Shown piece by piece: positions 18,271 to 38,496 of a DNA stretch of 64,000 nucleotides; position 1 is the first letter of the stretch; every line of letters begins with the position of its first letter. The stretch lies in sequence record PQ390715.1; one strand, written 5' to 3'. The position numbers were made by a program, and so were the translations under genes. The notes under the pieces are model-generated. The model searched no databases, was not told where the DNA came from, and saw nothing but the letters and a program-made list of their open reading frames with translations.

Positions 18271-18281
18271 GGGTTTAGCCT

Positions 18282-18366
18282 GGGGAGAATCCTAGTGATC
18301 GCATTTGTCCAGGCTGAATTTTAACAATTCGCCTGTACATAAAGGTTGTTCACTAGGAGCTTCCCC
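18282..18366. other. 85-nt imperfect rod-like inverted repeat
   Basis: GGGGA/TCCCC, TCCTAGTGA/TCACTAGGA, CAGGC/GCCTG and GAATT/AATTC arms around a central bubble. Confidence 0.7.
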
Positions 18367-18383
18367 TGTCTCTATGTGTTTAA

Positions 18384-21154: not shown

Positions 21155-21164
21155 TTGGTTTCCT

Positions 21165-22309: not shown

Positions 22310-22361
22310 TATAATGTAATTAGCCTTACTATATTAAAGTACTCGGTCCCTGGTGTACCTT

Positions 22362-23187
22362 TTAGAACTTAAAGATGAGGTTCAGGATAGAGCGGTACTT
22401 AGTTTCAGGGAACTGATGTTCTATTGCATAACGTGTCACCATCCTGAAATCGTAATTATAATACAGATTATCCTTTCTCATAGGTGGTGCTAAAGAGAAT
22501 GATAGCTGTTCTTGTTTGGGTAGTTTACTACAATAGAAATCTTTATGATTATTCATAGAAATATATTAGTCCTATTAAACCTGAGTACATAATATTTTTG
22601 TTATTGCATTCGATTGCTTCTAGAGTACTACGTATACAATTATTAAAGCAATCTCTACCGAATTGAGTATTGGTACTTACAGGTGATACACTCCTTAGAA
22701 ACAATTGTTCTTCGTTGCTAAGGTATTTGGTGTAGAATTCTTTATGTTCAGTATTCATATTAGTACTCGATTAATAGGGTAAGGATGTAATAGTATTGCA
22801 TACATTCTACCCCTTGTAAAGCATTTCTTATGTTATTATTCCTGTACGAGTTCAGGAGTTTAGGGCTACGTTTGAGGTGTTTGAAATTAGTTTGTGTATG
22901 CAGTAGGCTTTCACGTAGACCTTTTGTTGGTAGTGCATCGATGTAGTACTGTTCGATATTCATATAGATAGCAGTACTAAGATTTTTGATAATTGTTTAT
23001 TGCTATCCCCGCAGATGTTGCTGTGTAAAATACTCACAATGAGGGTATCAATTGCATTGTTCATCATAAGGGTGCATCCTGGACTATTATAATTTTTTAG
23101 CTCAATTAGCCACGAACTATCCGCGAGAAATTCCCCGTACTCTAGTTCATTTAGAGTATTGAGGTAGTACTTAAGAGTATTTGTCAT
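22362..23187 (-). CDS. Four further small paralogues: 22362-22556, 22549-22758, 22760-22963, 22960-23187
   Basis: 22549 is a close paralogue of 18956 (EHKEFY.KY.S..EQ.FLR...P.STNT.FGR.C.NNCI). Confidence 0.8.
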
Positions 23188-23212
23188 GTGTAGTTCTCCT
23201 TATATTCCTTCT

Positions 23213-23241
23213 ATAGTACACCAGTACTGAAAGAATGTCAA
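23213..23241 (-). promoter_or_regulatory. Sigma70-type promoter of the small-paralogue operon
   Basis: TTGACA-17-TACTAT with AGTACT in the spacer. Confidence 0.75.
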
Positions 23242-23290
23242 GGGTTTTCGTTAGGAGGTAAATATGATATAATGAATAAAGGAGAAAATA

Positions 23291-24400
23291 ATGTTACCTT
23301 TTGGAAGAATGTTAAAGTATGGGAATGTAGCACCTGTACCCAAAAAAATAAAGAAAGTTATTGCAGGATATGATAATTTATATGTACTATATGGTGATGG
23401 ATCGCTATATGGTTGTGGAATCAATAACTATCAACAGTTAAATATTACTGGAACTACTACACAAAATAAATGGGTACTGATTACAAATGGCGTTAATAAT
23501 GCATGGGCTGGTGGATATAATATTTTATATTTTAAAGAAGATAAATTTATAATGCACGGAACTAATGTCTCATTAGGTTTAGGAAATAATACAATTCCAC
23601 TAGGTGGAGTAGATGTAACTTCTTCATTTCCAGATATATCTGATATTAAAATGATATCCATTGGTTTTGATTCAATGCACTATGTTAGTGCTGATGGTAA
23701 AATTGTATATGGAAGAGGTATGAACACAAATGGTTCTGTTGGTTCAGGTAGTACTTACTCACAGAGTACTTTTACTTCAGTACTGAATAATGGCACTAAT
23801 CAGGTTATTGATATATTTGGTAACGTTAATAATACAGTGCTTCTAACGTCAAATGGCGAGCTTCGTGCGTGTGGTACAAGTGCTTATGGTTCCATAGGAA
23901 ATGAAACTGGTAAGTGGACATCGTTTGGTTTAAAATTATCTGGCACTAAAATAATGGGTGGTAATGCGTATAGTACGCTTGCATATACAAATGCGGGAAT
24001 GTACCACACAGGGTGGCAGTTAAATGGGGAACTGGGAAATGGTTTAGATACTAACGTACAGGTATATCCATTTCAATTTAACTCTAAAACAATAGATAGC
24101 AAGATAGATAAAATTGCTAAATCATCATCTGGGTCATATGTTAATATGTACTCAACAACAGAAGGAAAGATATATACTACAGGTGCATATGGTAAAAACG
24201 GCTCAACTACTGCATTGAATTTGTTCACCAATACACTAACACTTGAAAATTACAATCCAGATGCCGCAGCGTTGTATACGTGCACAAACTTCAGTGTTGT
24301 ATATGATGGTAATGAAACTATTGCTGTAAGTGGTAGTCCTACATATGTACCAGGTGACGTTGCCGCAAATAGATGGACCACAATTCCATTACCCAAGTAA
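23291..24400 (+). CDS. RCC1/BLIP-II-like beta-propeller, copy 1
   Basis: G.N..GQLG.G-type repeats; MLPFGRM N-terminus. Confidence 0.85.
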   Translation: MLPFGRMLKYGNVAPVPKKIKKVIAGYDNLYVLYGDGSLYGCGINNYQQLNITGTTTQNKWVLITNGVNNAWAGGYNILYFKEDKFIMHGTNVSLGLGNNTIPLGGVDVTSSFPDISDIKMISIGFDSMHYVSADGKIVYGRGMNTNGSVGSGSTYSQSTFTSVLNNGTNQVIDIFGNVNNTVLLTSNGELRACGTSAYGSIGNETGKWTSFGLKLSGTKIMGGNAYSTLAYTNAGMYHTGWQLNGELGNGLDTNVQVYPFQFNSKTIDSKIDKIAKSSSGSYVNMYSTTEGKIYTTGAYGKNGSTTALNLFTNTLTLENYNPDAAALYTCTNFSVVYDGNETIAVSGSPTYVPGDVAANRWTTIPLPK

Positions 24401-24469
24401 TACGATGCCAGTACTTGATACTGGCTTTCTTATTTGTATTAAATATAGTATAATGATAAAGGAGGAACT

Positions 24470-25648
24470 ATGTTACCTTTTGGAAGAATGTTGAATTATG
24501 GAAATGAAGCACCGGGCGTACCAACACCAAAAGATTTCTTTTTGGATGTATCATCCGGCAAACCTACTATGTTGATGCTTTTGGATAACGGCGAAGTATG
24601 GGGTTGTAGTAATGATGGACAACTATTAGGTTTAAACACTACCGCGTCAGCATACGGTAAGCCATACTTTGTTATGGAAAATGTTAAGTTAATGTTCGCG
24701 TCAGTGTGGGGGACATTACTTATCACTAACGATAATAAAGTGAAGTACACTGGTAGACAAACCATGTTTAATGGTTCATCTAATTATTGGAGTACTTTTC
24801 AAGATTTTACAACGAAGTACACGACTGTTGGTATTGACATAAGTACTATAGAAAAAGTTGGATTCAATACTGGTACATTATTCCTACGCACAACTAATGG
24901 TGATTTATGGGGTCATGGAAATAACGCTAATGGTTATTTCGGAAAAGGAAATACCGTGGCGAATTACACACCAACCAAGATCAAGACTAATACATTAGAT
25001 TTTTGGTTAACTAATGGGAATGCAATTGTACAAACTGGCCCTAAAGAATTCTATGCTACTGGTGATAATTATTATTATCAAATGGGTGTTACGACTACTG
25101 GTAATATAACAACATGGACACAGATTTTTAAGGACGCTACTGATGATCCTGAGTTTGAATATAATGCAATGCGAACAAGTCAAGCAACATTAATACTTTA
25201 CGGTAAAGGAACTACATTCTACGCAAGTGGGAGAAACTATATGAGTTCATGGGGTGTATCTGGAGCACCAGTGGATGTTAATACTACACTATATAAAGGT
25301 ACGTTACCATTTGTACCCGGGGATTTAACATATTTTTATGCTGGTCGAGAACAAGCATATTGGACTAACTTAATCATTGATACTAATGGAGTTCTGTACA
25401 TATCTGGAACAAAAGATGGGGGTGGTGGTTCAAATGCACCTATATTTGAAGTATTACCAACCCCAAGTAGTGCAGTTGGATTCAAATGTGGTACAGCAAC
25501 ACGTTCTTATGCTATAATGGATTGTACTGGCAATCAATTTATGTACGCACGTGGTACAGCTTTGTCAGACCCTGCTGGCTTTACACCAATGAGTACACCA
25601 TTAAATCATACATGGACACACATAACAGATTTTAAATTTAACCGATAA
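24470..25648 (+). CDS. RCC1-like beta-propeller, copy 2
   Basis: As copy 1. Confidence 0.85.
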   Translation: MLPFGRMLNYGNEAPGVPTPKDFFLDVSSGKPTMLMLLDNGEVWGCSNDGQLLGLNTTASAYGKPYFVMENVKLMFASVWGTLLITNDNKVKYTGRQTMFNGSSNYWSTFQDFTTKYTTVGIDISTIEKVGFNTGTLFLRTTNGDLWGHGNNANGYFGKGNTVANYTPTKIKTNTLDFWLTNGNAIVQTGPKEFYATGDNYYYQMGVTTTGNITTWTQIFKDATDDPEFEYNAMRTSQATLILYGKGTTFYASGRNYMSSWGVSGAPVDVNTTLYKGTLPFVPGDLTYFYAGREQAYWTNLIIDTNGVLYISGTKDGGGGSNAPIFEVLPTPSSAVGFKCGTATRSYAIMDCTGNQFMYARGTALSDPAGFTPMSTPLNHTWTHITDFKFNR

Positions 25649-25719
25649 TATTATGCCAGTACTTGATACTGGCATTTCTTTTTGTATTAAATATAGTATA
25701 ATGAATAAAGGAGGGAAAT

Positions 25720-26922
25720 ATGTTACCTTTTGGAAGAATGGTTAAGTACGCAAATATTGCACCAGGTCCAGAACCTGTAGAGTTCTCAGATGTTTTACAA
25801 CAACATTATACAAACTGTATGTATCTCCATAACCCAACTAATACTTTATATGGTTATGGTAGTAATAACTTTTATCAATTTGGTCTTGGGAATTCAGCAG
25901 CAGTTTCGTCATTTACAGTACTTGCAAGGAACTGTGCAGCCTTTTGGCTTGGTGTTCAAGGTTCGTTGATGATTGATTTGGATAATAAAATATACTACAC
26001 TGGGTCGGTTGGTGCATTTTCTGATTATGGAGATGCAACACCTGTTAATGGTTATTTGACAACATGGACTGATGTTACTGTTGCATTTAATAAAATAGGT
26101 GTTATGGCTAATATGATCAAGAGTGTATATATAGGTGAAAGTACTAGAATATTATTAACCGATGGTAGAGTAATTGCGTGTGGAAGAAATACCAATGGTG
26201 AATGTGGCTCTGGTAATAAAAATTCCATCCCTACACTCACAGTTATGACTAATATGGGTGAAGTTACACATATGGCATGTTCATTACAAGGAACGCACTA
26301 TATCAAATCAAATAAAGATGCATGGTTTTGTGGTAAGGATAACTTTGGTGAAAGTGGATGTGGTGGTAGTTCTGTTGTATATTTGAACAAATTCGTGATT
26401 AGTAATGTAGAACATATTAGTACTACATACGATGTTACTTGGTGGTTTACTACTGGTGGGTCTGTATATTATAGCGGGGTTAACAGTACTGGACAAGCTG
26501 GTAATGGTACGACTACATCGGTAAATCAGCTAACACCAATTAGGAACACATCGGTCACGGTTGATGTAAGTAAGTACAGTACTTTTATTTGTCCAAGTAA
26601 TATGGGAAATGCATCAATTGGTGCACCTATGGCACAATACGCACCATATGTTAGAAGTAGTGGTGCTAACTCATATGGTCAAGAAGGTAATGGAACTAAT
26701 ACATTAGTTAGAACTTGGAATATTTTTAATCTTAGTGCAATAAGTGGTGGTTATGACAATGTTCTTATGGCATCTAAAGATTGGAGCAGAACCATAATAA
26801 TTACTAAAGATTATAAATTATATGCATGTGGTGGCTGGAATGGAAATGGTGGTAGATTACCTAATGGTACTTATAGTATTACTACACTAACATTAATGCC
26901 AACGCAGTTATGGCAACAATAG
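25720..26922 (+). CDS. RCC1-like beta-propeller, copy 3
   Basis: GRNTNGECGSG and GANSYGQEGNG repeats. Confidence 0.85.
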   Translation: MLPFGRMVKYANIAPGPEPVEFSDVLQQHYTNCMYLHNPTNTLYGYGSNNFYQFGLGNSAAVSSFTVLARNCAAFWLGVQGSLMIDLDNKIYYTGSVGAFSDYGDATPVNGYLTTWTDVTVAFNKIGVMANMIKSVYIGESTRILLTDGRVIACGRNTNGECGSGNKNSIPTLTVMTNMGEVTHMACSLQGTHYIKSNKDAWFCGKDNFGESGCGGSSVVYLNKFVISNVEHISTTYDVTWWFTTGGSVYYSGVNSTGQAGNGTTTSVNQLTPIRNTSVTVDVSKYSTFICPSNMGNASIGAPMAQYAPYVRSSGANSYGQEGNGTNTLVRTWNIFNLSAISGGYDNVLMASKDWSRTIIITKDYKLYACGGWNGNGGRLPNGTYSITTLTLMPTQLWQQ

Positions 26923-26930
26923 GAGGGAAT

Positions 26931-28040
26931 ATGTTACCTTTTGGAAGAATGATTAGGTATGGAAATATTGTCCCTGGTCCTAAAAAAATAATTAAAGTTG
27001 GTGCTTCTACCCAAGGCCAATTCTTATTGACTGATTCACATGATTTATATTACATAGGTAGAAATCAAGGTGGTGAATCTGGAAATGGTAATACCAACAC
27101 GGTGTCTTCGTGGACATTAGTAAGTGCAGATGTTTCTAATTTTTTCGTGGGTGATCGTACACTTGTTATTATTAAAAATGATAATACGATATGGACATCA
27201 GGTCAAACGTACTGGTTCTCATCTTCTACAACTACTTCTTACAGTACTGTATTAGTTGAAAGGACTAGTTGGTTTACCAATGCTATACCAGTCAGTGAAA
27301 TTGCTAATATTGTATGCACAAATGGTTTAATATTTGTACTTAGCACTAATTCAGTACTCTATGGTGCAGGAGATAATGGATATCGTGGTTCTTTGGGTAT
27401 TGGTTCCTCATCAATTTACACATTAACTCAATGTGCTACGAACGTTCGTAAAGTAATGACCAATGCGAATGATAGTATGTATCTTACATTAGATAATAAG
27501 CTATATAGTTCTGGATGGAATAGTAGTGGGCAGCATGGTACGGGGAACCAAACACAAATTAACACTTGGGGATTGCGTAGTTCTGGTGTAATCGATGCAG
27601 CCATTGGTGGTAATGCATTAAATTACTATAATGGTACATCATATTTCGTATGTGGTCAAACTCCAAACTTTCTTAGTTCAGGTACGACTACATTCCGTGC
27701 AGTTCCTGTAAGTACTTTGCCTAATAGTTCTCCGTTGTTTATGACGAATTCACCTGCATTAAATACTGCTACACAAATGGTAATTACTAGTACATATCAA
27801 AAGGGTGTTGGGGCGAACCGTGGTTTGGGATTAAACAATTCTCAAACTGGTGCTATATATAGTGCTACCAATTTACAATTACCCGTTGAAGTTAGTGAGA
27901 TTAGGGATGTTCTTTTTAGTGATGGTTTGACATCGATATTAACCAAAAATGGAGATGTGTATAGTACTGGATCGTATTACGCCATTCCAGGTGCAATCGA
28001 GGATGTTGCAGTCTTTACTAAAATTGATTTACCAAAATAA
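26931..28040 (+). CDS. RCC1-like beta-propeller, copy 4
   Basis: GWNSSGQHGTG repeat; start at MLPFGRM. Confidence 0.85.
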   Translation: MLPFGRMIRYGNIVPGPKKIIKVGASTQGQFLLTDSHDLYYIGRNQGGESGNGNTNTVSSWTLVSADVSNFFVGDRTLVIIKNDNTIWTSGQTYWFSSSTTTSYSTVLVERTSWFTNAIPVSEIANIVCTNGLIFVLSTNSVLYGAGDNGYRGSLGIGSSSIYTLTQCATNVRKVMTNANDSMYLTLDNKLYSSGWNSSGQHGTGNQTQINTWGLRSSGVIDAAIGGNALNYYNGTSYFVCGQTPNFLSSGTTTFRAVPVSTLPNSSPLFMTNSPALNTATQMVITSTYQKGVGANRGLGLNNSQTGAIYSATNLQLPVEVSEIRDVLFSDGLTSILTKNGDVYSTGSYYAIPGAIEDVAVFTKIDLPK

Positions 28041-28110
28041 CATAATGCCAGTACACTGTACTGGCTTTCTTATTTGTATTAAATATAGTATAACAAATAA
28101 AGGAGGGAAT

Positions 28111-29250
28111 ATGTTACCTTTTGCAAGAATGGTTAAGTACGGGAATATCGCACCTGAACTGATTCTACCTAAAAACAGGTTACAATGTTCTGCTGATGCC
28201 AAATTTTATTTACACACAAATGGCAATCTATATTGGTTTGGTTCTTCAGCATATGGACAAAGTGGTAATGGTTCATTGGACTCTTCAACTGAATGGACTC
28301 TTGTCAACTCAAATGTTACACGATATTGGGGTGGGGTACAAGGAACAATTGCTATAAAGAAAGATGGTACTATTTGGTACACTGGTAGACGTACTGTTAT
28401 TCCAATACTATCTTCAAACACTAACGGCGTTTGGGTTGATATAACACAGAACTTTACTGATTTCGGTGTCAGTGCAGATGATATTGATAGTGTTGTGATA
28501 TCTTCGTGTATGCGTGTATTTTTAAAAAATGGAAAGTGGTTCTACTGTGGTGCTGGTACTGGTGGTGTTTTTGGGAATGGATCAACTTCAAGCGTTTCAC
28601 GATTCACCTATAGTACAATAGAAAATGTTATCAGTGCTGGTTGTGCAATATATAGTACTGGATTAGTACTAAATGATGGTTCATATTGGTATGCAGGTAG
28701 AACGTTTGTATCAGGAACGACGACACAAAACTTGCTCACATTTACACAAGATACTTCGATTAGTAATGCAATTAAAGCAGTCAATACAAATGAAACTTCT
28801 TATATATTTCTTAATGATGGTAATGTTAAAGTTGCATCTATTAACGACTATGGACAAGCAGGTACAGGAAATAGGTCAGTAGCCCCAATGAGTACATTAA
28901 TTCCAAATTTATCATTCCAAGGAGAAGTGGAGTTGGTGGGTGAGCTTGGGACAAACCTTACCGGACCATCCTGTATAATTAATAATAATAATAAGTTATT
29001 TTCATGTGGCCTTAATTCAAATGGTCAATGTGGTATTGGTACAACTGATATGTATATAACATCATTCGCTGAAATGGATCTTACTGCATTAGAAGGTAGT
29101 AATCTTAGTAGTTTTTGTAAGAGCTATTCTTATACGATGTTAGTTGACGAATATAATAATTTATACACATGTGGTGTACCCAATCTTACTGGAATGTCTT
29201 CAACTACTGTACCAACAAGGGTTCCTGATTCACTTCTACCGTGGAAATAA
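28111..29250 (+). CDS. RCC1-like beta-propeller, copy 5
   Basis: GLNSNGQCGIG repeat; start at MLPFARM. Confidence 0.85.
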   Translation: MLPFARMVKYGNIAPELILPKNRLQCSADAKFYLHTNGNLYWFGSSAYGQSGNGSLDSSTEWTLVNSNVTRYWGGVQGTIAIKKDGTIWYTGRRTVIPILSSNTNGVWVDITQNFTDFGVSADDIDSVVISSCMRVFLKNGKWFYCGAGTGGVFGNGSTSSVSRFTYSTIENVISAGCAIYSTGLVLNDGSYWYAGRTFVSGTTTQNLLTFTQDTSISNAIKAVNTNETSYIFLNDGNVKVASINDYGQAGTGNRSVAPMSTLIPNLSFQGEVELVGELGTNLTGPSCIINNNNKLFSCGLNSNGQCGIGTTDMYITSFAEMDLTALEGSNLSSFCKSYSYTMLVDEYNNLYTCGVPNLTGMSSTTVPTRVPDSLLPWK

Positions 29251-29321
29251 TATAATGCCAGTACACTGTACTGGCTTTCTTATTTGTATTAAATATAGTA
29301 TAATGAATAAAGGAGGGAAAT

Positions 29322-30470
29322 ATGTTACCTTTTGTAAGAATGATGAATTATGGGAATATTGCCCCTGGTAAGGATAGGCGTTTTAAAATATATTCAAGTG
29401 ATTCTATGTATCTTCATGATACTTATACTAATAAGTTGTATGCATCTTCTGCGACGAATTGGGGTACTGGTACAGGTGTAGCATCGAGTAAATTTATTCT
29501 TTGTGCAGAGAATGTTAAACGAGTTCTATTGGAAGATAACAGTAGTAGTTGTCAATTGTATGAAGAGAAAGGTACTGGAAAAGTTTTTATCACTGGTAAC
29601 ACGAAGGCATTCACTGGTGTAACTGATACAAAAACTTTGTGGACGGACTGTACTACGTGGATAACATCAGGTGGTATTAATGTTTCTGATATAAAATACA
29701 TGAGTAGTTTTAATGATATGAAGGTGAATTTGATAACAAACGATGGTACGTTGTATTGTTGTGGAGTTAACAATAACTCGAACCTATCATCATTTGGTGA
29801 TGGTACAAACATTAATTCTTTTAACACATTCAAAAGGGTAGATACTATAACTTCGGTTAAAAAGGCAGTTGGTAACATATACCTAAAAGAAGATAATACT
29901 TTATGGGGTTGTGGTTTTAACTATTACTATCAGTTAGGTACAGGTAATCAAACTTCTATTACTGGGGTGACGATGATTGCTTCGGATGTTATAGATTTTG
30001 ATGTAAGTTATCAAAGTACATTTTTTATTAAATCGGATAATAATTTGTACGCTTGTGGTAAACAGTTCGGTGCACAATACGGGAACGAATTTGGCACAGG
30101 TGGTACTTCTTCATCTACCGATATACAATACAAAACTCCGACATTATTGAGTTCGGGAGTTTATACTCTATATACGTGTGTTAGTAACATGGCATCACAT
30201 ATAGCTAAAGGTGATGAAGTTCTATACGCATCTGGGTCGAATAGATTTGGTCAATTAGGTGTTGGTAATAATATTAATCAGTACTCATATACTCCTTCGT
30301 ATACTTCGTTTAATAGTTCGTGTAATTTGGTACGCACTCCATCTGGTTCACTTATACTTACGGACACTGAGCAATTATATTATTGTGGGTATGCTATGGT
30401 AGTAATGGGGGGAATTGCTGGACAAAACATTCTTAGTTATACAGAAGTTGATATGTCATTTATACAATGA
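29322..30470 (+). CDS. RCC1-like beta-propeller, copy 6
   Basis: GFNYYYQLGTG and GSNRFGQLGVG repeats. Confidence 0.85.
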   Translation: MLPFVRMMNYGNIAPGKDRRFKIYSSDSMYLHDTYTNKLYASSATNWGTGTGVASSKFILCAENVKRVLLEDNSSSCQLYEEKGTGKVFITGNTKAFTGVTDTKTLWTDCTTWITSGGINVSDIKYMSSFNDMKVNLITNDGTLYCCGVNNNSNLSSFGDGTNINSFNTFKRVDTITSVKKAVGNIYLKEDNTLWGCGFNYYYQLGTGNQTSITGVTMIASDVIDFDVSYQSTFFIKSDNNLYACGKQFGAQYGNEFGTGGTSSSTDIQYKTPTLLSSGVYTLYTCVSNMASHIAKGDEVLYASGSNRFGQLGVGNNINQYSYTPSYTSFNSSCNLVRTPSGSLILTDTEQLYYCGYAMVVMGGIAGQNILSYTEVDMSFIQ

Positions 30471-30541
30471 TTTAATGCCAGTACAGAGTACTGGCTTTCT
30501 TATTTGTATTAAATATAGTATAATGAATAAAGGAGGAATTT

Positions 30542-31732
30542 ATGTTACCTTTTGTAAGAATGATGAATTATGGGAATATTGTCCCAGTACCACTTCAAAT
30601 TAAGAAAATAATCCCAACTGATTTAGATGTTGTTGTTCTGTATACGGATGGTCAACTATATGCACGTGGGAATAATAGTTTTGGGAAATTTGGTAGGGGA
30701 AACAACACTGCATTAAAATCATGGACATTAATTAGAGAAAACGTTAACGATTGCTGGGTTACACAAGGAACTTTATTAGTAAAAGATAATGACTCAAATT
30801 ATTTTTATTGTGGATATGGTGATCATGTTGGTTTACCAACTAGTACTACTACGTTTTTAAGTTATAACCAATATATTGAAAATTTGTACACGCAAAGTTC
30901 AAGTACTTCAATTAAACAGATGTATGGAGGTACTACGTGGTTTACGGTATTAATGGATAATAATACAATATGGAGTACTGGTTGGAGTGGGGCTAGACAA
31001 TTCGCTGATGGTACTGGTAGTACTCAACAAATAACAGATGGATCATTTGTAAAAGCTGTCACGCCTAATGTTGATATTGCACAAATACAGTCAACAAATA
31101 ACTGTGTAATGTTTTTTGATACACAAAATAATTTATATATTGGTGGTGGTACGTCAGGTATAAGTACCAGTACCACATGGACACCATTTAATGAATATAC
31201 TTTATATAAACCAAGTACAACATACACAAAAACGTTACAATACACTGGATGCTCAAGTGGTGCAGTCAGTGCTTTGGTTGAGAATCCAAGTTCTGGTGCA
31301 CGTCAGTTTCTAGTTGGTGGTTTAGCGAGTAATGGTGCATGGGGTAACAATACCACAACCAGTTCGGCACTTGCTGTATTAGGGAGCAATAGTACGACAT
31401 TACCAACTGGAACTTTGTATTCAATTCATACAGGATACCCAACACAATCTAGTATACTAGTTACGAGTACTGGTGTATATGCAACTGGTTTAAATGCCAG
31501 TAGTTATGCTGGTTCATTGGGTATTGGTACTAGTGCAACTGTTGGTAAGTTTACTGCATGTCCAATGCCTACACAAATAACATATTCTATGTATGATAAA
31601 ATAAAAATATATCGCGGTTCGTATCGTACTTTTCTAACTGCTGATATGAAAAATATATATTCAACCGGAACTTATGATGATGGTGGTCCTAGTACAACTA
31701 GATATGTACTAGATACACCCCGACAATTATAA
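30542..31732 (+). CDS. RCC1-like beta-propeller, copy 7
   Basis: GNNSFGKFGRG repeat. Confidence 0.85.
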   Translation: MLPFVRMMNYGNIVPVPLQIKKIIPTDLDVVVLYTDGQLYARGNNSFGKFGRGNNTALKSWTLIRENVNDCWVTQGTLLVKDNDSNYFYCGYGDHVGLPTSTTTFLSYNQYIENLYTQSSSTSIKQMYGGTTWFTVLMDNNTIWSTGWSGARQFADGTGSTQQITDGSFVKAVTPNVDIAQIQSTNNCVMFFDTQNNLYIGGGTSGISTSTTWTPFNEYTLYKPSTTYTKTLQYTGCSSGAVSALVENPSSGARQFLVGGLASNGAWGNNTTTSSALAVLGSNSTTLPTGTLYSIHTGYPTQSSILVTSTGVYATGLNASSYAGSLGIGTSATVGKFTACPMPTQITYSMYDKIKIYRGSYRTFLTADMKNIYSTGTYDDGGPSTTRYVLDTPRQL

Positions 31733-31804
31733 TATAATAGCCAGTACTCAGTACTGGCTTTTCTTTTTGTATTAAATATAGTATAACAAATAAAGGAGGG
31801 AATT

Positions 31805-32984
31805 ATGTTACCTTTTGGAAGAATGATGAATTATGGGAATATTGCCCCTGGCAAAGATACTGTTGTTAAAATTAATAGTGATGAAAATTCAATAAGCGTA
31901 TTATACAGTGATGGGTCATTATATATGCGTGGACGGAAACCAATTATCAAAAATGGGAGTTACTGGTTCATCTTTTTTAGATAGATGGGTTTTATGTCCT
32001 TATAGTGTTGATGATTTCTGGAGTTCTTTATATTGTACTATAATTAGAACAAAACAAGGGGAATTGTACTATAGTGGAACTAACTCAGTTTTTGGTATAT
32101 CATCTTCTGTTTCAACATGGACTCGTTGTGAATCATATTTTGGATCTATTTCTCCGAGTTCAATAAAAGATATAAAAATAACATCATCAACCAGTACTAA
32201 CAATTCCATGTTAATACTAACAAGTGACGGTCAGTTATATGGTATAGGCATGAATGGTGCAAGTGAATTGGGTACAGCAACTACACCAATTACATCTCCA
32301 CTCTTAATAGACACTAGTGTATCTGCAATTGCATCTAGTGAAATGAGCAGAAACTTTCACTATATAAAAGATGGTATATATTATCGTTGTGGTGAGAATA
32401 CTTTTTATCAATTAGGAACCGGTGATAATAATCCTATTACTACTTTTACTGCATTGAATCTTGGTAGTTCTCATGTAATTGCAGTACAAGCTACACGATG
32501 GGTAACACGTTTGATTGTTCAAAGTAGTACATCTGCTTTGTCTTTAATGGCGGCTGGTTGGAACACACAGTTGACTATAGGTGGTTCTGAAAATACTGCT
32601 ATAATAAGGTCATCATTTACTACAAATCCCTATACCGATATAACAGCAAATTCATTCGATAAACTTTCACCAGTATCCTATGTTAATGCAATAAAATCCA
32701 GTACTAACATTATTAATACGAATGGTAAGGGATATAATTCTAATGGTGCTGGATTAGGCCGCAACGCATTCTCTGGGAATTATGGTTCAATATTACCAAT
32801 AGAATTCTTTGATGATAGTGTTGACTTATCACATGTTGAGTGGTTTGGTACGATTGGTAATGGTTCAGTATCGGTAGTTAGTATAGGTGAGGATTTATAC
32901 TGGACTGGAAACCCTGGGTATTTTACTGAACAAGGTGAGACTGGATATATATATAAATTCAAAAAGTGCATTCCTTTTAGATAA
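31805..32984 (+). pseudogene. RCC1-like copy 8, +1 frameshift near 31937-31939
   Basis: MLPFGRM frame stops at 31984; the propeller continues in the next frame; removing one A from CGGAAAC restores it. Confidence 0.8.
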
Positions 32985-33055
32985 ACACAATGCCAGTACT
33001 TGATACTGGCTTTCTTATTTGTATTAAATATAGTATAATGAATAAGGAGGGAATT

Positions 33056-34198
33056 ATGTTACCTTTTGGAAGAATGGTTAAGTACGGGAATATTGCACCA
33101 GTTCCGGTAGTTCCTACAATAAAAGATTTTAAGATTGGCTTTTCACATGAAGTGTTATTGGACAGTGCAGGTGATGCATGGGGTATTGGATACAATACAG
33201 ATGGGCAGTTAGGCTTTTTGGATGCAAATACCAATTCACTAGGTGCGTGGTCGAAGATATATACTGATGTTCGATTAATTGGTGTTACTGCCAGATATAC
33301 AGTTGTAGTTACTAATAATAATAGAATACTATACGCAGGAAATAACTTAATTTCTAGTACTACCACGCTTGGGTGGACCGATATAACTGCCAGTATGGGT
33401 CCAGTTGCAGTGGATAGCATCGATGCATTATATTGCACAGATGGCATGATGCATATTAAAACTGCTGATGGTTCTTTATACGCATATGGACGTAATATGA
33501 ACGCAAACAGTGGTGTTACTGGTGGTGTTATTAGTGTTGCAACTAAGGTTAATTTGCCTTCTGCTGTAAATGACATGCGATATACGTTTAGTTATGGTTC
33601 AGTACTATGTCGATTGGATACGACTTCTATATACGCATGGGGACGAAACACAAATGGTGAATTAGGCCAGGGTAATACAACAGCTATCGTTACACCAAAA
33701 CTATTGTCTGGTGCTTCTATTGCAATGGGTACTTCGTATAATGCTACTGCAATTGTTTCTGGTTCTGCATCGTTAGTTACGTGTGGTGGTCAGAACAGTG
33801 GTCAGTTGGGTAATGGTATTACTACTGATGGTAATGTTTACGTATATGCTGCTAGAACATACCCTGGCGATCTTAATACTATAAGAAGTCCAGTGGATTG
33901 TAGTACAACGTACACCTCTGCATTTATGAGTCCAGATGGTATATATTACACTGGTGCTAACCGAAGCATGTTTGGTGGTATTAGTGGTGCTGCTACCGTT
34001 GGTGTATATACTAAATGTAGTGATTTACCAATAACATATTCTAATATAATTCAGTGGGGTAGTGGTACTATTGGTGGTGCTATATGTAGTAGTACAGAGT
34101 TATACCAATGTGGCATCGGTCGATACATTGCTGGCGATGGTGCGAGCACAACCAGGTATGGATTTAGGAAGACACCATTACCTTGGGATGTTTATTGA
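33056..34198 (+). CDS. RCC1-like beta-propeller, copy 9
   Basis: GRNTNGELGQG repeat. Confidence 0.85.
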   Translation: MLPFGRMVKYGNIAPVPVVPTIKDFKIGFSHEVLLDSAGDAWGIGYNTDGQLGFLDANTNSLGAWSKIYTDVRLIGVTARYTVVVTNNNRILYAGNNLISSTTTLGWTDITASMGPVAVDSIDALYCTDGMMHIKTADGSLYAYGRNMNANSGVTGGVISVATKVNLPSAVNDMRYTFSYGSVLCRLDTTSIYAWGRNTNGELGQGNTTAIVTPKLLSGASIAMGTSYNATAIVSGSASLVTCGGQNSGQLGNGITTDGNVYVYAARTYPGDLNTIRSPVDCSTTYTSAFMSPDGIYYTGANRSMFGGISGAATVGVYTKCSDLPITYSNIIQWGSGTIGGAICSSTELYQCGIGRYIAGDGASTTRYGFRKTPLPWDVY

Positions 34199-34268
34199 AA
34201 TTATGCCAGTACAAAGTACTGGCTTTCTTATTTGTATTAAATATAGTATAATGAATAAGGAGGGAATT

Positions 34269-35448
34269 ATGTTACCTTTTGGAAGAATGGTTAAGTACGG
34301 GAATATTGCACCTATATATGAATCTAGTGTAATTAAAATGCAAGCACCATCGGCTTTTACCAACAACACATTGATGATTCTGTATAAGAACGGTGATTTG
34401 TGGGGTATTGGCGGTAACAATGCTGGTATATTCGGTCTTGGAAATACAACGACACAGACCAAATGGGTTCGCTTAATGCAAAATGTGAAAAATTTTTGGT
34501 GCACAAGGAATGCTTCATATAGCTTAGTTCAGACCAATGATAATAAATTTTATTATGCAGGTTGGAACCTTTGGACTGGTACATCTAGTGCAGTTCAAAG
34601 TACTACATTTGTTGATTGTACGTCTTATTTTTCAGGTTTTAATGTGGATAATATCAAGGAGATATATCCAAATGTTCGTAATATGTTTTTACTAACAAAT
34701 GATAGTGTTCTTTACGCAATAGGTGATAATTCAACCTATGAGTTGGGTAGTAGTTCATCTACACTTACATCATTTACACAGGTTAATATTAATGTTAAAA
34801 AGGTTAGTTCATTTTTCAATAGTCCAACTTGGATAATTAAAAATGATAATTCAGCATGGAGATGTGGTAAAACTAGTACTGGTACATTGTTAACTGGTTC
34901 TGCTACTGATACTTTGACGAGTTGGACAAAGTATAGTTTTCCTACAGGCCAGTACCCCGTTGATATAATTTCATATAACAATATGTTGGGTATAGTTCTT
35001 AATGTAGATAATACTTATCCGCTATATGGTGTAGGGTCACAAAATTCACGGACAATTAGGAAATGGTGTTCTATCTAATACTAATAAGATATCTTTAACT
35101 CCACAAAGTACTTATTTACAATTAACTAATGTTTCCGATTTTGAATTTATACAAACATATTCACAAAATCCTAGGGGATTATTATATAGAAATGGAAGTC
35201 GTATTTTTGGAACAGGGTATAATAATTATGGACAGCTTGGTAACAATTCATCTAATAATGCTTCAATTTTCGTCCAAGCACAATTTCCAAATTCTGTAGT
35301 TTATGATCCGTCAACATCGTTGGTTGCTGCGAATGACAATGCATTATTTGCATATGTGAATGGGAAATTATACTACACTGGTATGTCTCCAGTAGGGACA
35401 GTTGTTGGTACATGGACTTTAACTGAATACCAATTGCCACAAATTTAA
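34269..35448 (+). pseudogene. RCC1-like copy 10, +1 frameshift near 35041-35049
   Basis: GQLGNG...GYNNYGQLGN continues in the shifted frame to TAA at 35446-35448. Confidence 0.8.
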
Positions 35449-35458
35449 GGAGAAAATT

Positions 35459-36628
35459 ATGTTACCTTTTGGAAGAATGTTAAAGTACGGAAATATTAAA
35501 CCAACTCTTCCTGAAATAAAGAAATTGGATGGTAGTCAATTACATGTCGGATTACTTTATAGTACAGGGAATATGTACATGCGTGGTTCTGGTTCGAACT
35601 ATAAATTAGGTACAGGGGATGCTAGTGATGTATTAGGTGGTTGGGTACATGTACCCTATGAAGTTGATGATTTTTGGGCGTGTGTATCCGGTACATTAAT
35701 AAAGACTGTTGATAATAAGTTATATTGTGCCGGACTATACATGGGTGGATATTTTGGGGCTAGTGGTTCATATGTTAACTGGACTGAAGTAACTTCATTA
35801 TTTGTAGGTATTGACGTGTCGCAAATAAAGAATATAGAATTTACGTCAGCGGGTACTTCCGGTAGTACACTAATATTGATGTTAGATGGTCGTTTATATG
35901 GGTTCGGTATGAACAGTAGATCTGAGTTAGGTGTTAATAACAAAGTTGTATCTCCCATTCTTATAGATACTGGGGTAAGTGCAATAGGAGCACATAAGTT
36001 AGGCGGTTCATCGTTCCATTATATAAAAGGCGGTAAGTACTACAGATGTGGAACATCGGTTGGTAGTAATATTGGAAGTTCTTCTTTAACTACTTTTACG
36101 GTATTGAGTATTCCTGATAACGTTATATCTATGCAAATATTATATGACAACGTACAGTTATTATGTTTAGGAAGTTCTGGATATAGTATCTATATGGCTG
36201 GTTCTAATGATTATGGTGGAAGAGGTGTTGGTGGTTCTACTGTTTACACTACATTCAGGAAAATAGATCTTACAGGATTTGGTGTTGTTCCCAGTGAAAT
36301 ACTATTTGAAAATGCCGGAAATGGTTATGTTAATATATCAACTGATAGTACTGGAGTATATACATGTGGTGGTGGGGCTGGTGTTAATGGTTTAGGTAGA
36401 CCAACTGATGTGATACCAAGTTCACAGTTGGGTTCGGTTCAGTTCAGTACTGGAGTAGTACCATCAAATATAAGTCGCGTGTATTCACAGAGTTCGAGTT
36501 CTGTTATATATTGTATAGTCAATAATGAATTGTACTGGGCTGGGAGTAATTCATATTTTACTGATCAAACCACAAATACTGGTACACAATTTTCATTTAT
36601 TAAAATGAAGGATATGCCTTCTGCTTAG
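35459..36628 (+). CDS. RCC1-like beta-propeller, copy 11
   Basis: LYGFGMNSRSELG; close paralogue of copy 8. Confidence 0.85.
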   Translation: MLPFGRMLKYGNIKPTLPEIKKLDGSQLHVGLLYSTGNMYMRGSGSNYKLGTGDASDVLGGWVHVPYEVDDFWACVSGTLIKTVDNKLYCAGLYMGGYFGASGSYVNWTEVTSLFVGIDVSQIKNIEFTSAGTSGSTLILMLDGRLYGFGMNSRSELGVNNKVVSPILIDTGVSAIGAHKLGGSSFHYIKGGKYYRCGTSVGSNIGSSSLTTFTVLSIPDNVISMQILYDNVQLLCLGSSGYSIYMAGSNDYGGRGVGGSTVYTTFRKIDLTGFGVVPSEILFENAGNGYVNISTDSTGVYTCGGGAGVNGLGRPTDVIPSSQLGSVQFSTGVVPSNISRVYSQSSSSVIYCIVNNELYWAGSNSYFTDQTTNTGTQFSFIKMKDMPSA

Positions 36629-36700
36629 ATTTTATGCCAGTGCCTTGTACTGGCATTTTTTTGTCCTAAATATAATAACGATTTACATTTGGAGGATACA

Positions 36701-37853
36701 ATGCTACCCTTTGGAAGAATTATCACATCATCAAAAAAGAACATACAACCTTCTGTTACAAAAATAGCTTCATCTGATACAACAGTTTTTGCCCTTATGT
36801 CAGATGGTACGTTGTACAGTAGAGGCTCTCAAGAGTTTGGGCAAATGGGTATAGGTAATATTATAACACAAACCAAATGGGTTTTGTGCAATACAAACGT
36901 AGAAGATCTATGGGTTCGGGTATGAGTCAACATTAATTAAAAAGAAAGATAATACGATGTGGTATGCTGGAAATGGTGCATCATTCGGTTTATCAACTGA
37001 TAAGTCAACAACGTGGGCTTCTGCAAAGATAGTGTTTGATAGAATAACAGCACTTGGAAAAACAATAAAACAAATTGCAGTTAGTGCAGGTGCATTAAGC
37101 GTATTATGTACAGACAACACGATATGGAATACGGGTTATGGTAGTTATGGACAACTGGGAAATGGTAGAAGTACCGATTCACTTTCATCATTTGTACAAG
37201 GAACATTACCTACTGGAGTAACACCATCCAAAATACTGGCAAATTTTCTTATGCAAGGATTTATTGGAACCGATGGGAGATTGTATTATACTGGTGCAAT
37301 ATCAGGCGTAGGTACAACCGACATGACGTTATATTCAAAGTACACGTTATGTTCTCAAATAACTAATACCTATACAGTAAAAGATTATACAACAAACTCA
37401 AGTTACTTTGCTTTTGCTATAGCAAATAATAATAGTACTAATAAATTATTTGCATATCATGGTGGTGGTCAATACTTTGGTCAGTTAGCAAATGGTTCTA
37501 CATCACAAACATATATTTCGTTAAGACAAACAACACAAGCACCAGGTGATATAATAAGAAGCAGTGTAGGTTATTCATATTTTTCTAATCATATTATAAC
37601 TTCATTGGGTGTTTACGCAACTGGTAATAACACAGGCGATAACGCAGGTCAATTGGGTATAGGTACACAAACAGATGTGTCGGCCTATACCAAATGTGTA
37701 CTACCAATAGAGATGAATATGAATAACGTATATGTTACAGCAACTTTATACAGAACTTACTTAACCGATGGTATACAAATTTACAGTACTGGACAATATA
37801 TTACAGACGGTGGAGTTGCCAGTACTGTATTTGTCAAAGATTCACCATTTTAG
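36701..37853 (+). pseudogene. RCC1-like copy 12, +1 frameshift near 36912-36919
   Basis: ...DLWV(G)YESTLIKKKDNTMWY is restored by deleting one base in GGGTTCGGG. Confidence 0.8.
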
Positions 37854-38496
37854 GAATATTGTACAAAGTGTATGCGGTTATTTTAGAACTCTTTTTAAAT
37901 TCATCGTAAAGATAATTCAAAATTTTGGAACATTCAATATACTTTTCAATATCTTTATGGATTAATGAGTACTGAAACATTAAATCAGATGATATATTGT
38001 AGGTACTACCTTTTAAACTGTTTAAAATATCACAGATTTCAGGGTTTACGGGTACTTCGTCAAAATTATCATCTAAAACATTTATTTCAAAATCAAAGCC
38101 ATCTTTGTTTTTGATTAATTTGATAATAGAATCACCATAAACATTATATTGTTTTAATGGATTTACTACAATGTTAAAAAGATTGGATGTATTACAATCA
38201 ATATCCATAAAGTATGTATTATCATTGTACTTAATATTGAAACATCCGTACTCAATAAAATCACCAGGAGTTATTGATGAGTTTCTTCTCGTTTCAACAT
38301 AAGAAGCTTTAATTTTGTTTTTATTTAAAAGAGTAATAAATTTCTTAGACTGTTTAGCACCAGCTAAGTAAGTATTATAACTTGGTCTTTTAAAAATTAT
38401 AGGACTAGACTTCTCACCAGAGAAATATTTTTTTATAAATTTACGCTGTTTAACGAAATAATTTTTATAAAACAAACCTAATTTTGTTTTCATCAT
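37834..38496 (-). CDS. Hypothetical protein
   Basis: 220-aa ORF with AGGAG RBS. Confidence 0.75.
   Translation of the reverse strand: MMKTKLGLFYKNYFVKQRKFIKKYFSGEKSSPIIFKRPSYNTYLAGAKQSKKFITLLNKNKIKASYVETRRNSSITPGDFIEYGCFNIKYNDNTYFMDIDCNTSNLFNIVVNPLKQYNVYGDSIIKLIKNKDGFDFEINVLDDNFDEVPVNPEICDILNSLKGSTYNISSDLMFQYSLIHKDIEKYIECSKILNYLYDEFKKSSKITAYTLYNIPKMVNL

What the first reader, a model, noticed from the sequence alone, without database searches (positions are those of the whole stretch)
23291..37853. Array of 12 RCC1-like beta-propeller cassettes joined by a ~95-bp repeat that packages terminator, promoter box, RBS and N-terminal codons
Seen: 12 paralogues of ~370-400 aa with highly divergent bodies. 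Nine junctions carry a near-identical repeat (GCCAGTAC-N3-GTACTGGC-T-tract, TATTAAATATAGTATAA, AAGGAGG, ATGTTACCTTTTG); two junctions lack it. Established: RCC1/BLIP-II propellers are protein-binding scaffolds. Inference: each gene is a self-contained module, and recombination between repeats could delete, duplicate or swap modules (a gene accordion), giving a variable repertoire of binders such as receptor-binding accessories or inhibitors of host proteins. Similar genes are, from recall, annotated in related phages without a function; the cassette architecture is the point of interest here.
Basis: partly seen in the sequence, partly recalled or inferred. Interest (0 to 1): 0.8.

Follow-up and report, generated by a model that had tools for sequence, protein, structure and literature searches.

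The report
Shuffled array of tagged virion binders
A giant E. coli phage carries twelve very different propeller-shaped binding proteins in a row. Each starts with the same 12-residue tag, and most are separated by one regulatory repeat. Related phages have swapped, lost or gained these cassettes exactly at that shared stretch, so the array looks like a plug-in set of virion-borne binding heads.

Summary
**Observation: confirmed.** The window is Escherichia phage SHEFM2K, a 348-kb jumbo phage of the PBECO4/121Q group.
- Positions 23291-37853 (+) hold 12 RCC1-like cassettes: 9 intact and 3 broken.
- Eight junctions carry a near-identical hairpin/T-tract, box and Shine-Dalgarno (SD) repeat. One junction has a degenerate copy and two have none.
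- All cassettes start with a shared tag.

**Interpretation: partly supported.**
- In 9 relatives the arrays hold 9-13 cassettes from at least 23 body families, in differing order.
- 33 of 39 ends of shared blocks fall within -78 to +50 of a cassette ATG.
- No genome holds recent duplicates, so this is cassette shuffling of the PeSL type known from T4-like phages, not an accordion.

**New here.**
- The 12-residue N-terminal tag (M-L/I-P-F-x-x-h-x-x-Y-G-N, h = hydrophobic) is kept at the protein level across Rak2-like jumbo phages.
- It heads unrelated bodies: RCC1 and Kelch propellers, ConA-like lectin domains, and a glycine-rich protein resembling a cyanophage fibre.
- Published virion proteomics of phAPEC6, CBB and GAP32 detect tagged proteins.
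- The junction box shares a 9-mer with the late-type promoter of a virion gene.

**Best reading (about 0.6):** late-expressed, virion-associated binding heads docked through the tag. Their location on or in the virion and their targets are inferred, not shown.

The parts
23188..23290 (.). Divergent leader between the minus-strand small-gene array and cassette 1. It holds a box related to the junction box (G-TAAATA-..-TATAAT) and an SD, but no hairpin.
   Evidence: The same G-TAAATA leader motif lies upstream of tagged genes of GAP32 and CBB.
23291..24400 (+). Cassette 1: intact, 369 aa, tag plus RCC1-like propeller.
24401..24469 (+). Junction repeat 1>2: hairpin 24407-24425 with T-tract, box 24437-24453, SD.
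24470..25648 (+). Cassette 2: intact, 392 aa.
25649..25719 (+). Junction repeat 2>3: hairpin 25653-25675, box 25685-25701, SD.
25720..26922 (+). Cassette 3: intact, 400 aa. Modelled as a seven-bladed RCC1-like propeller, with residues 1-29 predicted at low confidence.
26923..26930 (+). Short junction 3>4 with no hairpin or box. The SD overlaps the end of cassette 3.
26931..28040 (+). Cassette 4: intact, 369 aa.
28041..28110 (+). Junction repeat 4>5: hairpin 28047-28065, box 28077-28093, SD.
28111..29250 (+). Cassette 5: intact, 379 aa.
29251..29321 (+). Junction repeat 5>6: hairpin 29257-29275, box 29287-29303, SD.
29322..30470 (+). Cassette 6: intact, 382 aa.
30471..30541 (+). Junction repeat 6>7: hairpin 30477-30495, box 30507-30523, SD.
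30542..31732 (+). Cassette 7: intact, 396 aa.
31733..31804 (+). Junction repeat 7>8: hairpin 31739-31759, box 31770-31786, SD.
31805..32984 (+). Cassette 8: broken by one change of reading frame. RCC1 homology continues in a second frame. The cassette is split the same way in the annotations of slurp01 and PBECO4.
32985..33055 (+). Junction repeat 8>9: hairpin 32992-33010, box 33022-33038, SD.
33056..34198 (+). Cassette 9: intact, 380 aa.
34199..34268 (+). Junction repeat 9>10: hairpin 34205-34223, box 34235-34251, SD.
34269..35448 (+). Cassette 10: broken. It is cut short, and the remainder holds only short ORFs in other frames. The same short gene is annotated in 121Q, G17 and phAPEC6. In phAPEC6 its product, gp007, was detected in virions.
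35449..35458 (+). Short junction 10>11 with no hairpin or box.
35459..36628 (+). Cassette 11: intact, 389 aa.
36629..36700 (+). Degenerate junction repeat 11>12: hairpin 36634-36656, diverged box, weak SD.
36701..37853 (+). Cassette 12: broken by one change of reading frame. The tag has diverged after residue 6. It is split the same way in slurp01, E9.1, 121Q and PBECO4. Its end overlaps the convergent minus-strand gene 37834-38496.

Best explanation
The array is a repertoire of stand-alone binding heads that become part of the phage particle. Each cassette encodes a 12-residue N-terminal tag (M-L/I-P-F-x-x-h-x-x-Y-G-N, h = hydrophobic) followed by a divergent seven-bladed RCC1-like propeller.

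**Shown**
- The tag is a lineage-wide signal of Rak2-like jumbo phages. It sits on unrelated folds.
- Tagged proteins are found in purified virions of three relatives.

**Inferred**
- The tag docks the head to a common site of the virion. The most likely site is external fibres or hairs. Packaging inside the head is the alternative.
- The propeller faces bind different host-surface or environmental ligands.
- Most cassettes are insulated by an upstream intrinsic-terminator hairpin. They are driven by their own box, which resembles the T4-type late promoter used by virion genes of this phage, so expression would be late.

**Shown by comparison**
- The roughly 120-nt conserved stretch (hairpin, box, SD and tag codons) is the homology at which related phages have exchanged, lost, gained and re-ordered whole cassettes. 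Each phage therefore carries a different subset of a large shared pool.
- This works like the PeSL-mediated modular shuffling of T4-like phages, with a protein-level tag added.
For: **Architecture.**

**Shuffling.**
- Nine phages carry 9-13 cassettes each. There are 104 cassettes in all, and at least 23 body families (80% aa identity or more) among the 81 intact ones. Order differs between phages; for example, 121Q starts with cassette 6.
- 33 of 39 ends of blocks of at least 93% identity lie at -78 to +50 of a cassette ATG. That zone is about 11% of a cassette.
- The SD-plus-tag sequence occurs 5-15 times per genome in 37 Asteriusvirus records.
- The non-coding repeat occurs 3-12 times per genome, and only inside the array in SHEFM2K.

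**Genes are functional.** dN/dS of orthologous bodies is 0.06-0.30, with one at 0.66.

**The tag is a protein-level signal.**
- Outside Asteriusvirus, 51 tags keep P3, F4, Y10 and N12 while their codons vary synonymously.
- The tag heads RCC1, Kelch and Laminin_G_3/ConA-like bodies, a glycine-rich body and small unknown bodies.
- In the cassette 3 model, residues 1-29 have pLDDT below 50 and lie outside the propeller.

**Virion association (literature).**
- phAPEC6: gp003, 005, 006, 007, 009, 010, 549 and 551 (PMC7247149).
- CBB: CBB_548, 549, 551, 552 and 553, at 9-51% coverage (PMC5259590).
- GAP32: gp1.
- All CBB and GAP32 array products start with the tag.

**Binding-head character.**
- RCC1-like propellers form distal parts of phage tail-fibre proteins in BFVD.
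- The ConA-like tagged bodies match C-terminal parts of baseplate and large virion proteins in PHROGs.
- The glycine-rich cassette that replaces cassette 8 in E9.1 best matches the cyanophage Pam3 fibre (7ypx_A, probability 0.99).

**Late-type box.** TAAATATAG occurs 9 times in the window. Eight are the junction boxes. The ninth is the promoter of a virion structural gene. Exact TATAAATA occurs only upstream of the two annotated virion genes.
Against: - No proteomic, transcript or structural data exist for SHEFM2K itself.
- The virion lists of phAPEC6 and fENko-Kae01 also contain obvious non-structural proteins. phAPEC6 coverage of the RCC1 proteins is low (3-17%), so co-purification is not excluded.
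- No docking partner is identified.
- The location, outside or inside the particle, is not determined.
- The box has a perfect sigma-70 -10 hexamer in six of eight junctions and differs from the exact late motif by one extra base. Timing is therefore open.
- The match of the glycine-rich model to the Pam3 fibre has a low TM-score (0.32).
- Three of twelve cassettes are broken, and they have stayed broken in several relatives. That fits weak selection on individual members.
- Junction repeats are as alike between genomes as within them (0.86-0.93). There is thus no sign of ongoing within-genome homogenisation, and selection on regulatory function alone could keep them alike.
Confidence: 0.6

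Rival explanations
1. Internal (head-packaged, possibly ejected) proteins. The tag would be a capsid-targeting peptide like that of the T4 internal proteins. The propellers would be packed with the DNA, perhaps forming the inner body seen in phAPEC6. They would act inside the host after ejection, for instance by binding host defence proteins.
For: - A short N-terminal peptide shared by otherwise unrelated virion proteins is the hallmark of the T4 internal proteins, described as a diverse set of defence proteins sharing only a capsid targeting sequence (PMC3012670).
- phAPEC6 has an inner body, and its authors suggested the RCC1-like proteins as candidates.
- Tagged proteins are detected in virions in three phages.
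Against: - The other folds carrying the tag are typical of external fibres and adhesins: a ConA-like lectin domain matching C-termini of baseplate and large virion proteins, Kelch, and a glycine-rich fibre-like protein.
- The products are near neutral (pI 5.1-8.2, net charge -4 to +2).
- No conserved acidic residue follows the hydrophobic positions of the tag in SHEFM2K, so a T4-type maturation cleavage site is not evident.
Confidence: 0.2
2. Non-virion cytoplasmic binders. The propellers would act in the infected cell as inhibitors or adaptors of host proteins. Their detection in virion preparations would be carry-over. The tag would serve some other common need, such as a shared partner, turnover or translation start.
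For: - RCC1-like and Kelch propellers are protein-binding scaffolds in cellular proteins.
- Virion preparations of phAPEC6 and fENko-Kae01 contain many non-structural proteins.
- The array lies in a region of small early-type genes.
- The box contains a sigma-70 type -10 hexamer.
Against: - Three independent proteomes detect tagged proteins. Five of seven were found in CBB, with up to 51% coverage.
- The box shares a 9-mer with a virion-gene promoter.
- The bodies resemble fibre and baseplate domains.
Confidence: 0.12
3. The repeats are only regulatory punctuation. The terminator, promoter and SD would be kept alike by selection for expression. Differences between arrays would arise by other routes, and the exchange points would coincide with the repeats only because alignments extend through them.
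For: - Junction repeats are no more alike within a genome than between genomes.
- BLAST blocks necessarily extend through any shared sequence.
Against: - If exchanges happened within bodies, block ends would lie in bodies. Only 6 of 39 do, all within cassette 12.
- Whole cassettes, including a non-RCC1 one, replace each other cleanly between two shared stretches.
- Junctions lacking hairpin and box still serve as exchange points through the SD and tag codons.
Confidence: 0.05
4. DNA condensation proteins, as many records annotate them.
For: Only the name of the Pfam/PHROG family and a suggestion in PMC7247149.
Against: - The name comes from eukaryotic RCC1, a Ran exchange factor.
- The products are near neutral, not basic.
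- Twelve copies only 21-32% identical argue for diversified binding rather than one DNA-packing role.
- The same tag sits on lectin-like and fibre-like bodies.
Confidence: 0.03

Closest known systems
PeSL (promoter-early stem-loop) cassettes of T4-like phages (Arbiol et al. 2010, PMC2839356; Comeau et al. 2014, PMC4122927)
   Same: - A short composite intergenic motif repeated many times in a plastic region.
- It runs from the stop of the upstream gene through a stem-loop terminator and a promoter to the SD and start codon.
- Insertions, deletions and replacements between close relatives map to the motifs.
- Each gene is transcriptionally insulated.
   Different: - Here the motif flanks members of one tagged protein set, not unrelated ORFans.
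- The homology extends 45 nt into the coding region and encodes a conserved peptide.
- The promoter part resembles the late-type motif rather than a strong sigma-70 early promoter with a -35 box.
- The stem is GCCAGTAC-type, not G/C runs.
- The host phage is a Rak2-like jumbo phage.
- Mini-circles have not been looked for.
T4 internal proteins with their capsid targeting sequence (reviewed in PMC3012670)
   Same: A short conserved N-terminal peptide on otherwise unrelated, fast-evolving proteins that end up in the virion, encoded in a variable locus.
   Different: - No sequence likeness was tested or found.
- No evident maturation cleavage site.
- The bodies here are large binding folds typical of external fibres.
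- A location inside the head is not shown.
Modular phage receptor-binding proteins: lineage-specific N-terminal anchor plus exchangeable distal head, for example tail fibres with a T7-type N-terminal domain and an RCC1-like distal propeller (BFVD hits)
   Same: - An anchor conserved within the phage lineage.
- Distal binding domains (RCC1-like, ConA-like, glycine-rich) shared across lineages and swapped by recombination at the boundary.
   Different: - The anchor here is only about 12 residues.
- The heads are separate small proteins present as 5-15 paralogues side by side, not alternative ends of one fibre gene.
Gene accordions of poxviruses (recalled from my own knowledge, not from a paper read here)
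   Same: Tandem arrays of paralogues in a large DNA virus whose copy number varies between isolates.
   Different: Accordions are recent, near-identical amplifications that expand and contract under selection. Here no two copies in a genome are close (37% identity or less, one pair at 68%).
RCC1-like paralogues already noted in Rak2-like phages (PMC7247149; PMC5259590)
   Same: The same genes. The papers note eleven copies in phAPEC6 and multiple copies in 121Q and PBECO4, and report virion detection.
   Different: In the passages I retrieved from those two papers with term searches, nothing describes the junction repeat, the shared tag, its presence on non-RCC1 bodies, or exchange at the repeats. 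A full-text search for five spellings of the tag found nothing.

Membership tests
RCC1-like domain (seven-bladed beta-propeller) | RCC1 repeat signatures in the sequence | tested here: met
   Pfam RCC1 and/or RCC1_2 at or above the gathering score in 8 of 9 intact products. WD40_RLD at E 1e-12 to 1e-30, below its 150-bit cut-off. PDB profile hits at E 1e-33.
RCC1-like domain (seven-bladed beta-propeller) | Seven four-stranded blades closing into a propeller | tested here: met
   AlphaFold model of cassette 3: pLDDT 85.6, 27 strands. Foldseek matches UVR8, HERC2, RPGR and RCC1 at TM 0.74-0.80.
RCC1-like domain (seven-bladed beta-propeller) | Guanine-nucleotide exchange or chromatin binding, as in RCC1 proper | not testable with these tools
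   No Ran-type partner exists in bacteria. The products are near neutral.
PeSL regulatory cassettes | Conserved composite intergenic motif repeated in a plastic region, ending in the SD and start codon | tested here: met
   8 near-identical copies plus 1 degenerate copy. Array-specific within the genome.
PeSL regulatory cassettes | Stem-loop able to terminate or attenuate transcription | tested here: met
   Stems of 7-10 bp followed by T-tracts, -10.4 to -14.6 kcal/mol, z about -4 to -6. Activity was not measured.
PeSL regulatory cassettes | Strong sigma-70-like early promoter with -35 and -10 boxes and an AT-rich upstream region | tested here: inconclusive
   A -10-like hexamer is present, but the -35 is weak (3-4 of 6) and lies in the hairpin arm. 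The box instead shares a 9-mer with a late-type promoter.
PeSL regulatory cassettes | Indels and replacements between close relatives map to the motifs | tested here: met
   33 of 39 block ends lie at -78 to +50 of a cassette start. Cassette maps.
PeSL regulatory cassettes | Formation of mini-circles by recombination between neighbouring motifs | not testable with these tools
   Needs sequencing reads of lysate DNA.
PeSL regulatory cassettes | Occurrence in T4-like (Tevenvirinae-type) genomes, flanking unrelated ORFans | tested here: not met
   The host is an Asteriusvirus jumbo phage. The flanked genes share a tag, and most share a fold.
T4-type internal proteins / capsid targeting sequence | Short N-terminal peptide shared by otherwise unrelated proteins | tested here: met
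T4-type internal proteins / capsid targeting sequence | Proteins present in the virion | tested here: inconclusive
   Literature covers relatives only. There is nothing for SHEFM2K.
T4-type internal proteins / capsid targeting sequence | Peptide removed by the prohead protease at a conserved site | tested here: inconclusive
   No conserved acidic residue in the SHEFM2K tags. Some tags in other genera have one at position 9. No N-terminal peptide data.
T4-type internal proteins / capsid targeting sequence | Location inside the head and ejection with the DNA | not testable with these tools
   Needs structural or localisation data.
Gene accordion | Recent tandem duplicates, near identical | tested here: not met
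   The highest identity between two bodies of one genome is 29-37% in eight phages and 68% in 121Q. No body family occurs twice in a genome.

The most novel reading that the evidence does not exclude
The 12-residue N-terminal tag would be a universal plug of Rak2-like jumbo phages. Any protein that carries it, whether an RCC1 or Kelch propeller, a lectin-like domain or a glycine-rich fibre head, would be docked non-covalently to a common and abundant site of the particle, such as the tail or capsid hairs. Each virion would then display a mixed, multi-specific coat of binding heads. The composite repeat (terminator, late-type box, SD and tag codons) would make those heads freely exchangeable between co-infecting relatives. 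That would be a combinatorial adhesin system, different in kind from single-fibre switching or diversity-generating retroelements.
Probability: 0.35. Interest if true: 0.8.

Novelty: new variant of a known kind. Interest (0 to 1): 0.62.

Why it matters
**The gap.** Jumbo phages of the Rak2 group carry hundreds of genes of unknown function. Their striking RCC1 paralogue arrays have so far been labelled 'DNA condensation' by name alone.

**What this analysis adds.**
- A concrete, testable model: a short conserved tag marks virion-destined binding modules of several folds.
- The arrays are the most variable part of otherwise 97-99% identical genomes.
- Variation arises at a defined composite repeat.

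**If right.**
- It explains the function of about 4% of the genome.
- It gives a sequence rule (the tag) for finding accessory virion proteins in this whole clade.
- It extends PeSL-type modular shuffling beyond T4-like phages.
- It points to the part of the genome most likely to underlie differences in what these phages bind.

**If wrong.** The comparative map still documents a clear natural case of cassette exchange at regulatory repeats.

Tried and rejected
- **Genome-specific concerted evolution of the repeats.** Rejected. Within-genome and between-genome identities are the same, 0.86-0.93.
- **Accordion (recent duplication).** Rejected.
- **Tag as a structural strand of the propeller.** Not supported. 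Residues 1-29 are low-confidence and lie outside the fold.
- **Known RNA family in the junctions.** None found in Rfam at gathering thresholds.
- **The sigma-70 promoter scan as evidence.** Uninformative: 82 sites against 84 expected.
- **Word-indexed homologue search with cassette 3.** It gave only 10 hits, so it was of little use for distribution. DNA searches of the phage collection and IMG/VR were used instead.
- **Sequence search of the glycine-rich cassette against PDB.** Nothing useful came back. Only the fold comparison gave a lead.
- **fENko-Kae01 proteomics.** Too unspecific to count, with 220 proteins from an ultrafiltered lysate.

1. The output listed the lengths of the first open reading frames of broken cassettes. 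That amounts to the places of their first breaks.

Full report
**Identity of the window.** Positions 23000-38000 are 100% identical to Escherichia phage SHEFM2K (PQ390715.1, 348 kb; window coordinate = record coordinate minus 62000). They are 97-99% identical, over only part of their length, to slurp01, E9.1, PBECO4, SP27, 121Q, G17 and four Salmonella phages, all Asteriusvirus-type jumbo phages. The record annotates the genes as 'regulator of chromosome condensation', PHROG 4219. The array is the only plus-strand block in a long run of small minus-strand genes.

- Eleven cassettes start with the same 13-mer, and a twelfth has a variant start.
- Nine are intact (369-400 aa). All nine hit Pfam RCC1-type models, and their profile finds solved RCC1-like domains at E down to 1e-33.
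- An AlphaFold model of cassette 3 is a confident propeller (pLDDT 85.6, pTM 0.86). It matches UVR8, HERC2, RPGR and RCC1 at TM 0.74-0.80.
- The bodies are only 21-32% identical.
- Eight junctions carry the same hairpin with T-tract, the same 17-mer box and an SD. One junction, before cassette 12, has a degenerate copy. Cassettes 4 and 11 abut the gene before them.
- The box is absent from the rest of the window.
- The hairpins are stable, at -10 to -15 kcal/mol and z about -4 to -6.
- Anchored on the ATG, the conserved block runs from about -73 to +45.
- Three cassettes are broken. Cassettes 8 and 12 each have one change of frame, and cassette 10 is cut short. The same splits are annotated in relatives, so they are inherited rather than errors of this assembly.

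**Comparative test of the shuffling idea.** I cut the arrays of eight phages at the tag and clustered the bodies at 85% or more DNA identity.
- Copy number was 10-13 in those eight. UE-S1, added, has 9.
- Content and order differ:
  - SHEFM2K is 1-12.
  - slurp01 has an extra first cassette and another body in place of 10.
  - PBECO4 and SD-15_S21 lack 1 and 2 and carry two other bodies near the end.
  - E9.1 replaces 8 and 10.
  - 121Q, G17 and phAPEC6 carry many other bodies and a different order.
- With UE-S1 included, nine phages hold 104 cassettes. The 81 intact RCC1-size ones fall into 23 families at 80% or more amino-acid identity. Two families occur in all nine phages and six occur in only one.
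- The ends of blocks at least 93% identical to SHEFM2K fall at -78 to +50 of a cassette start in 33 of 39 cases. The other six lie inside cassette 12. That zone is about 11% of a cassette. If the events were independent, which they are not, the excess would be of order 1e-26.
- Junctions without hairpin and box also act as exchange points. The minimal shared stretch is therefore the SD plus tag codons, and the unit of exchange runs from tag to tag.
- The SD-plus-tag sequence occurs 5-15 times per genome in 37 Asteriusvirus records.
- The non-coding repeat occurs 3-12 times per genome and is confined to this genus.
- No genome holds two close copies, so the word 'accordion' does not fit.
- Repeats are no more alike within a genome than between genomes.

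**The cassettes are working genes.** Orthologous bodies show dN/dS of 0.06-0.30, with one at 0.66.

**The tag.**
- In SHEFM2K the first seven codons are invariant even at synonymous sites. Codons 8-15 vary synonymously while keeping the residues.
- In 121Q, E9.1, G17, phAPEC6 and UE-S1, a 245-aa glycine-rich protein occupies one array slot. It shares only residues 1-16 with the RCC1 set and belongs to PHROG 4474.
- Arrays in other genera contain RCC1 and non-RCC1 genes that all begin with the same motif: Erwinia phage Kaldavass, Klebsiella phage fENko-Kae01, Pectobacterium phage CBB and Cronobacter phage GAP32.
- A pattern scan of IMG/VR found clusters of the tag only in contigs of about 350-380 kb and in one of 109 kb. 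Tagged bodies range from 169 to 435 aa.
- In one such contig the tagged bodies are RCC1, Kelch and ConA-like (Laminin_G_3).
- Fifty-one tags outside Asteriusvirus keep P3, F4, Y10 and N12 through synonymous codon changes. This is protein-level selection, not DNA homogenisation.
- In the cassette 3 model, residues 1-29 are of low confidence and lie outside the propeller.
- Outside the jumbo phages, relatives of the glycine-rich protein (Pfam Gly_rich_2) carry a different short N-terminus. That is expected if the N-terminus is a lineage-specific adaptor and the body an exchangeable module.
- A full-text search for five spellings of the tag found no paper.

**Where the proteins go.**
- Virion mass spectrometry of phAPEC6 lists eight array products (PMC7247149).
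- That of CBB lists five of the seven tagged products, with 9-51% coverage (PMC5259590).
- GAP32 gp1 was also found in virions.
- These lists are not perfectly clean, since phAPEC6 also lists replication proteins. The fENko-Kae01 list is too broad to use.
- The SHEFM2K products are near neutral, which argues against the 'DNA condensation' label.

**What kind of virion protein.**
- RCC1-like propellers occur as distal parts of phage tail-fibre proteins, one of them with a T7-type fibre N-terminus.
- The ConA-like tagged bodies match C-terminal parts of baseplate and very large virion proteins.
- The glycine-rich cassette, modelled at pLDDT 92, has the cyanophage Pam3 fibre as its only significant PDB match (E 5.5e-4, probability 0.99, but TM 0.32).
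- CBB and phAPEC6 are the two phages reported to have hair-like appendages.
- I therefore favour external binding heads over internal proteins, though the short-tag precedent of the T4 internal proteins (PMC3012670) keeps that rival alive.

**Regulation.**
- The exact T4-type late motif quoted in PMC5259590 occurs only twice in the window, against 14 expected. Both copies lie directly upstream of the two annotated virion structural genes.
- The 9-mer TAAATATAG occurs nine times: the eight junction boxes plus one of those two late promoters.
- The box thus looks like a late-type promoter with one extra base, overlapping a sigma-70 type -10 hexamer. Its weak -35-like element lies in the hairpin arm.
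- Leaders of tagged genes in GAP32, CBB and cassette 1 share a G-TAAATA motif.
- Timing is inferred, not shown.

**Comparison with what is known.**
- The closest mechanism is the PeSL of T4-like phages. It is the same composite motif from stop codon to start codon, with the same mapping of indels to the motifs.
- The differences are the clade, the late-type rather than early promoter, and the extension into a coding tag.
- The paralogue arrays themselves and their virion detection were already in the literature.
- In the passages I retrieved from those papers by term search, I found no description of the repeat, the tag, its multi-fold cargo or the exchange map.
- I therefore rate this a new variant of a known kind.

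**Limits.**
- All functional statements rest on sequence, predicted structure and proteomics of relatives.

Noticed in passing
window 18384-23187, minus strand: About 22 abutting small paralogous genes (59-81 aa, several in PHROG 11711) are transcribed away from the RCC1 array. They share a loose pattern: M-N/H-..-E-F/Y-Y near the start and a hydrophobic L-L-I-F/Y-R-Y-like end. Their number differs between relatives. This is a second variable paralogue array next to the first.
   Followed up: partly
window 52527-52534 (-) and 53175-53182 (-): The exact T4-type late promoter octamer occurs only twice in 64 kb, against 14 expected by chance. Both copies lie just upstream of the two genes annotated as virion structural proteins (50956-52485 and 52755-53138, minus strand). 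The motif seems to be avoided wherever it is not used.
   Followed up: yes
window 18001-24000: GC skew turns positive at about 18 kb and stays positive to 38 kb. The strand switch of the genes is at 23.2 kb, so the minus-strand small-gene array shares the skew sign of the plus-strand RCC1 array.
   Followed up: no
window 32977-33576, minus strand: A 199-aa ATG-started antisense ORF lies inside cassette 9. It is not annotated in the record and is probably spurious, but it is long for this AT-rich DNA.
   Followed up: no
L043 (Pectobacterium phage CBB) about 9180-9240, minus strand: The leader of the CBB tagged array contains a short ORF. It joins the tag directly to the last roughly 20 residues typical of the glycine-rich family. 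It looks like the scar of a cassette deletion.
   Followed up: partly
L015, L018, L021, L026, L029, L036 (IMG/VR contigs of 10-51 kb): Six smaller viral contigs share an identical 185-aa ORF with a tag-like start (M-V-P-F-..-Y-Y-G-N). The tag or a look-alike may exist outside jumbo phages.
   Followed up: no
alignment A3 (relatives of the glycine-rich cassette): Outside the jumbo phages this roughly 250-aa glycine-rich family has its own conserved short N-terminus (M-L/I-E-L/M-hydrophobic). That suggests short N-terminal adaptors on small fibre-like proteins may be a wider habit of phages.
   Followed up: partly
window 42225-43649 (-) and 62580-63368 (-): Genes annotated as homing endonuclease and HNH endonuclease lie among the small minus-strand genes downstream of the array.
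   Followed up: no
L010 (Escherichia phage UE-S1) 2376-2480 and 8035-8138: The depositors of UE-S1 annotated two of the junctions as 'repeat_region' of about 104 bp. An annotation pipeline has therefore flagged the repeat before. My term search of the accompanying paper for the repeat, promoter and RCC1 terms found no mention.
   Followed up: yes
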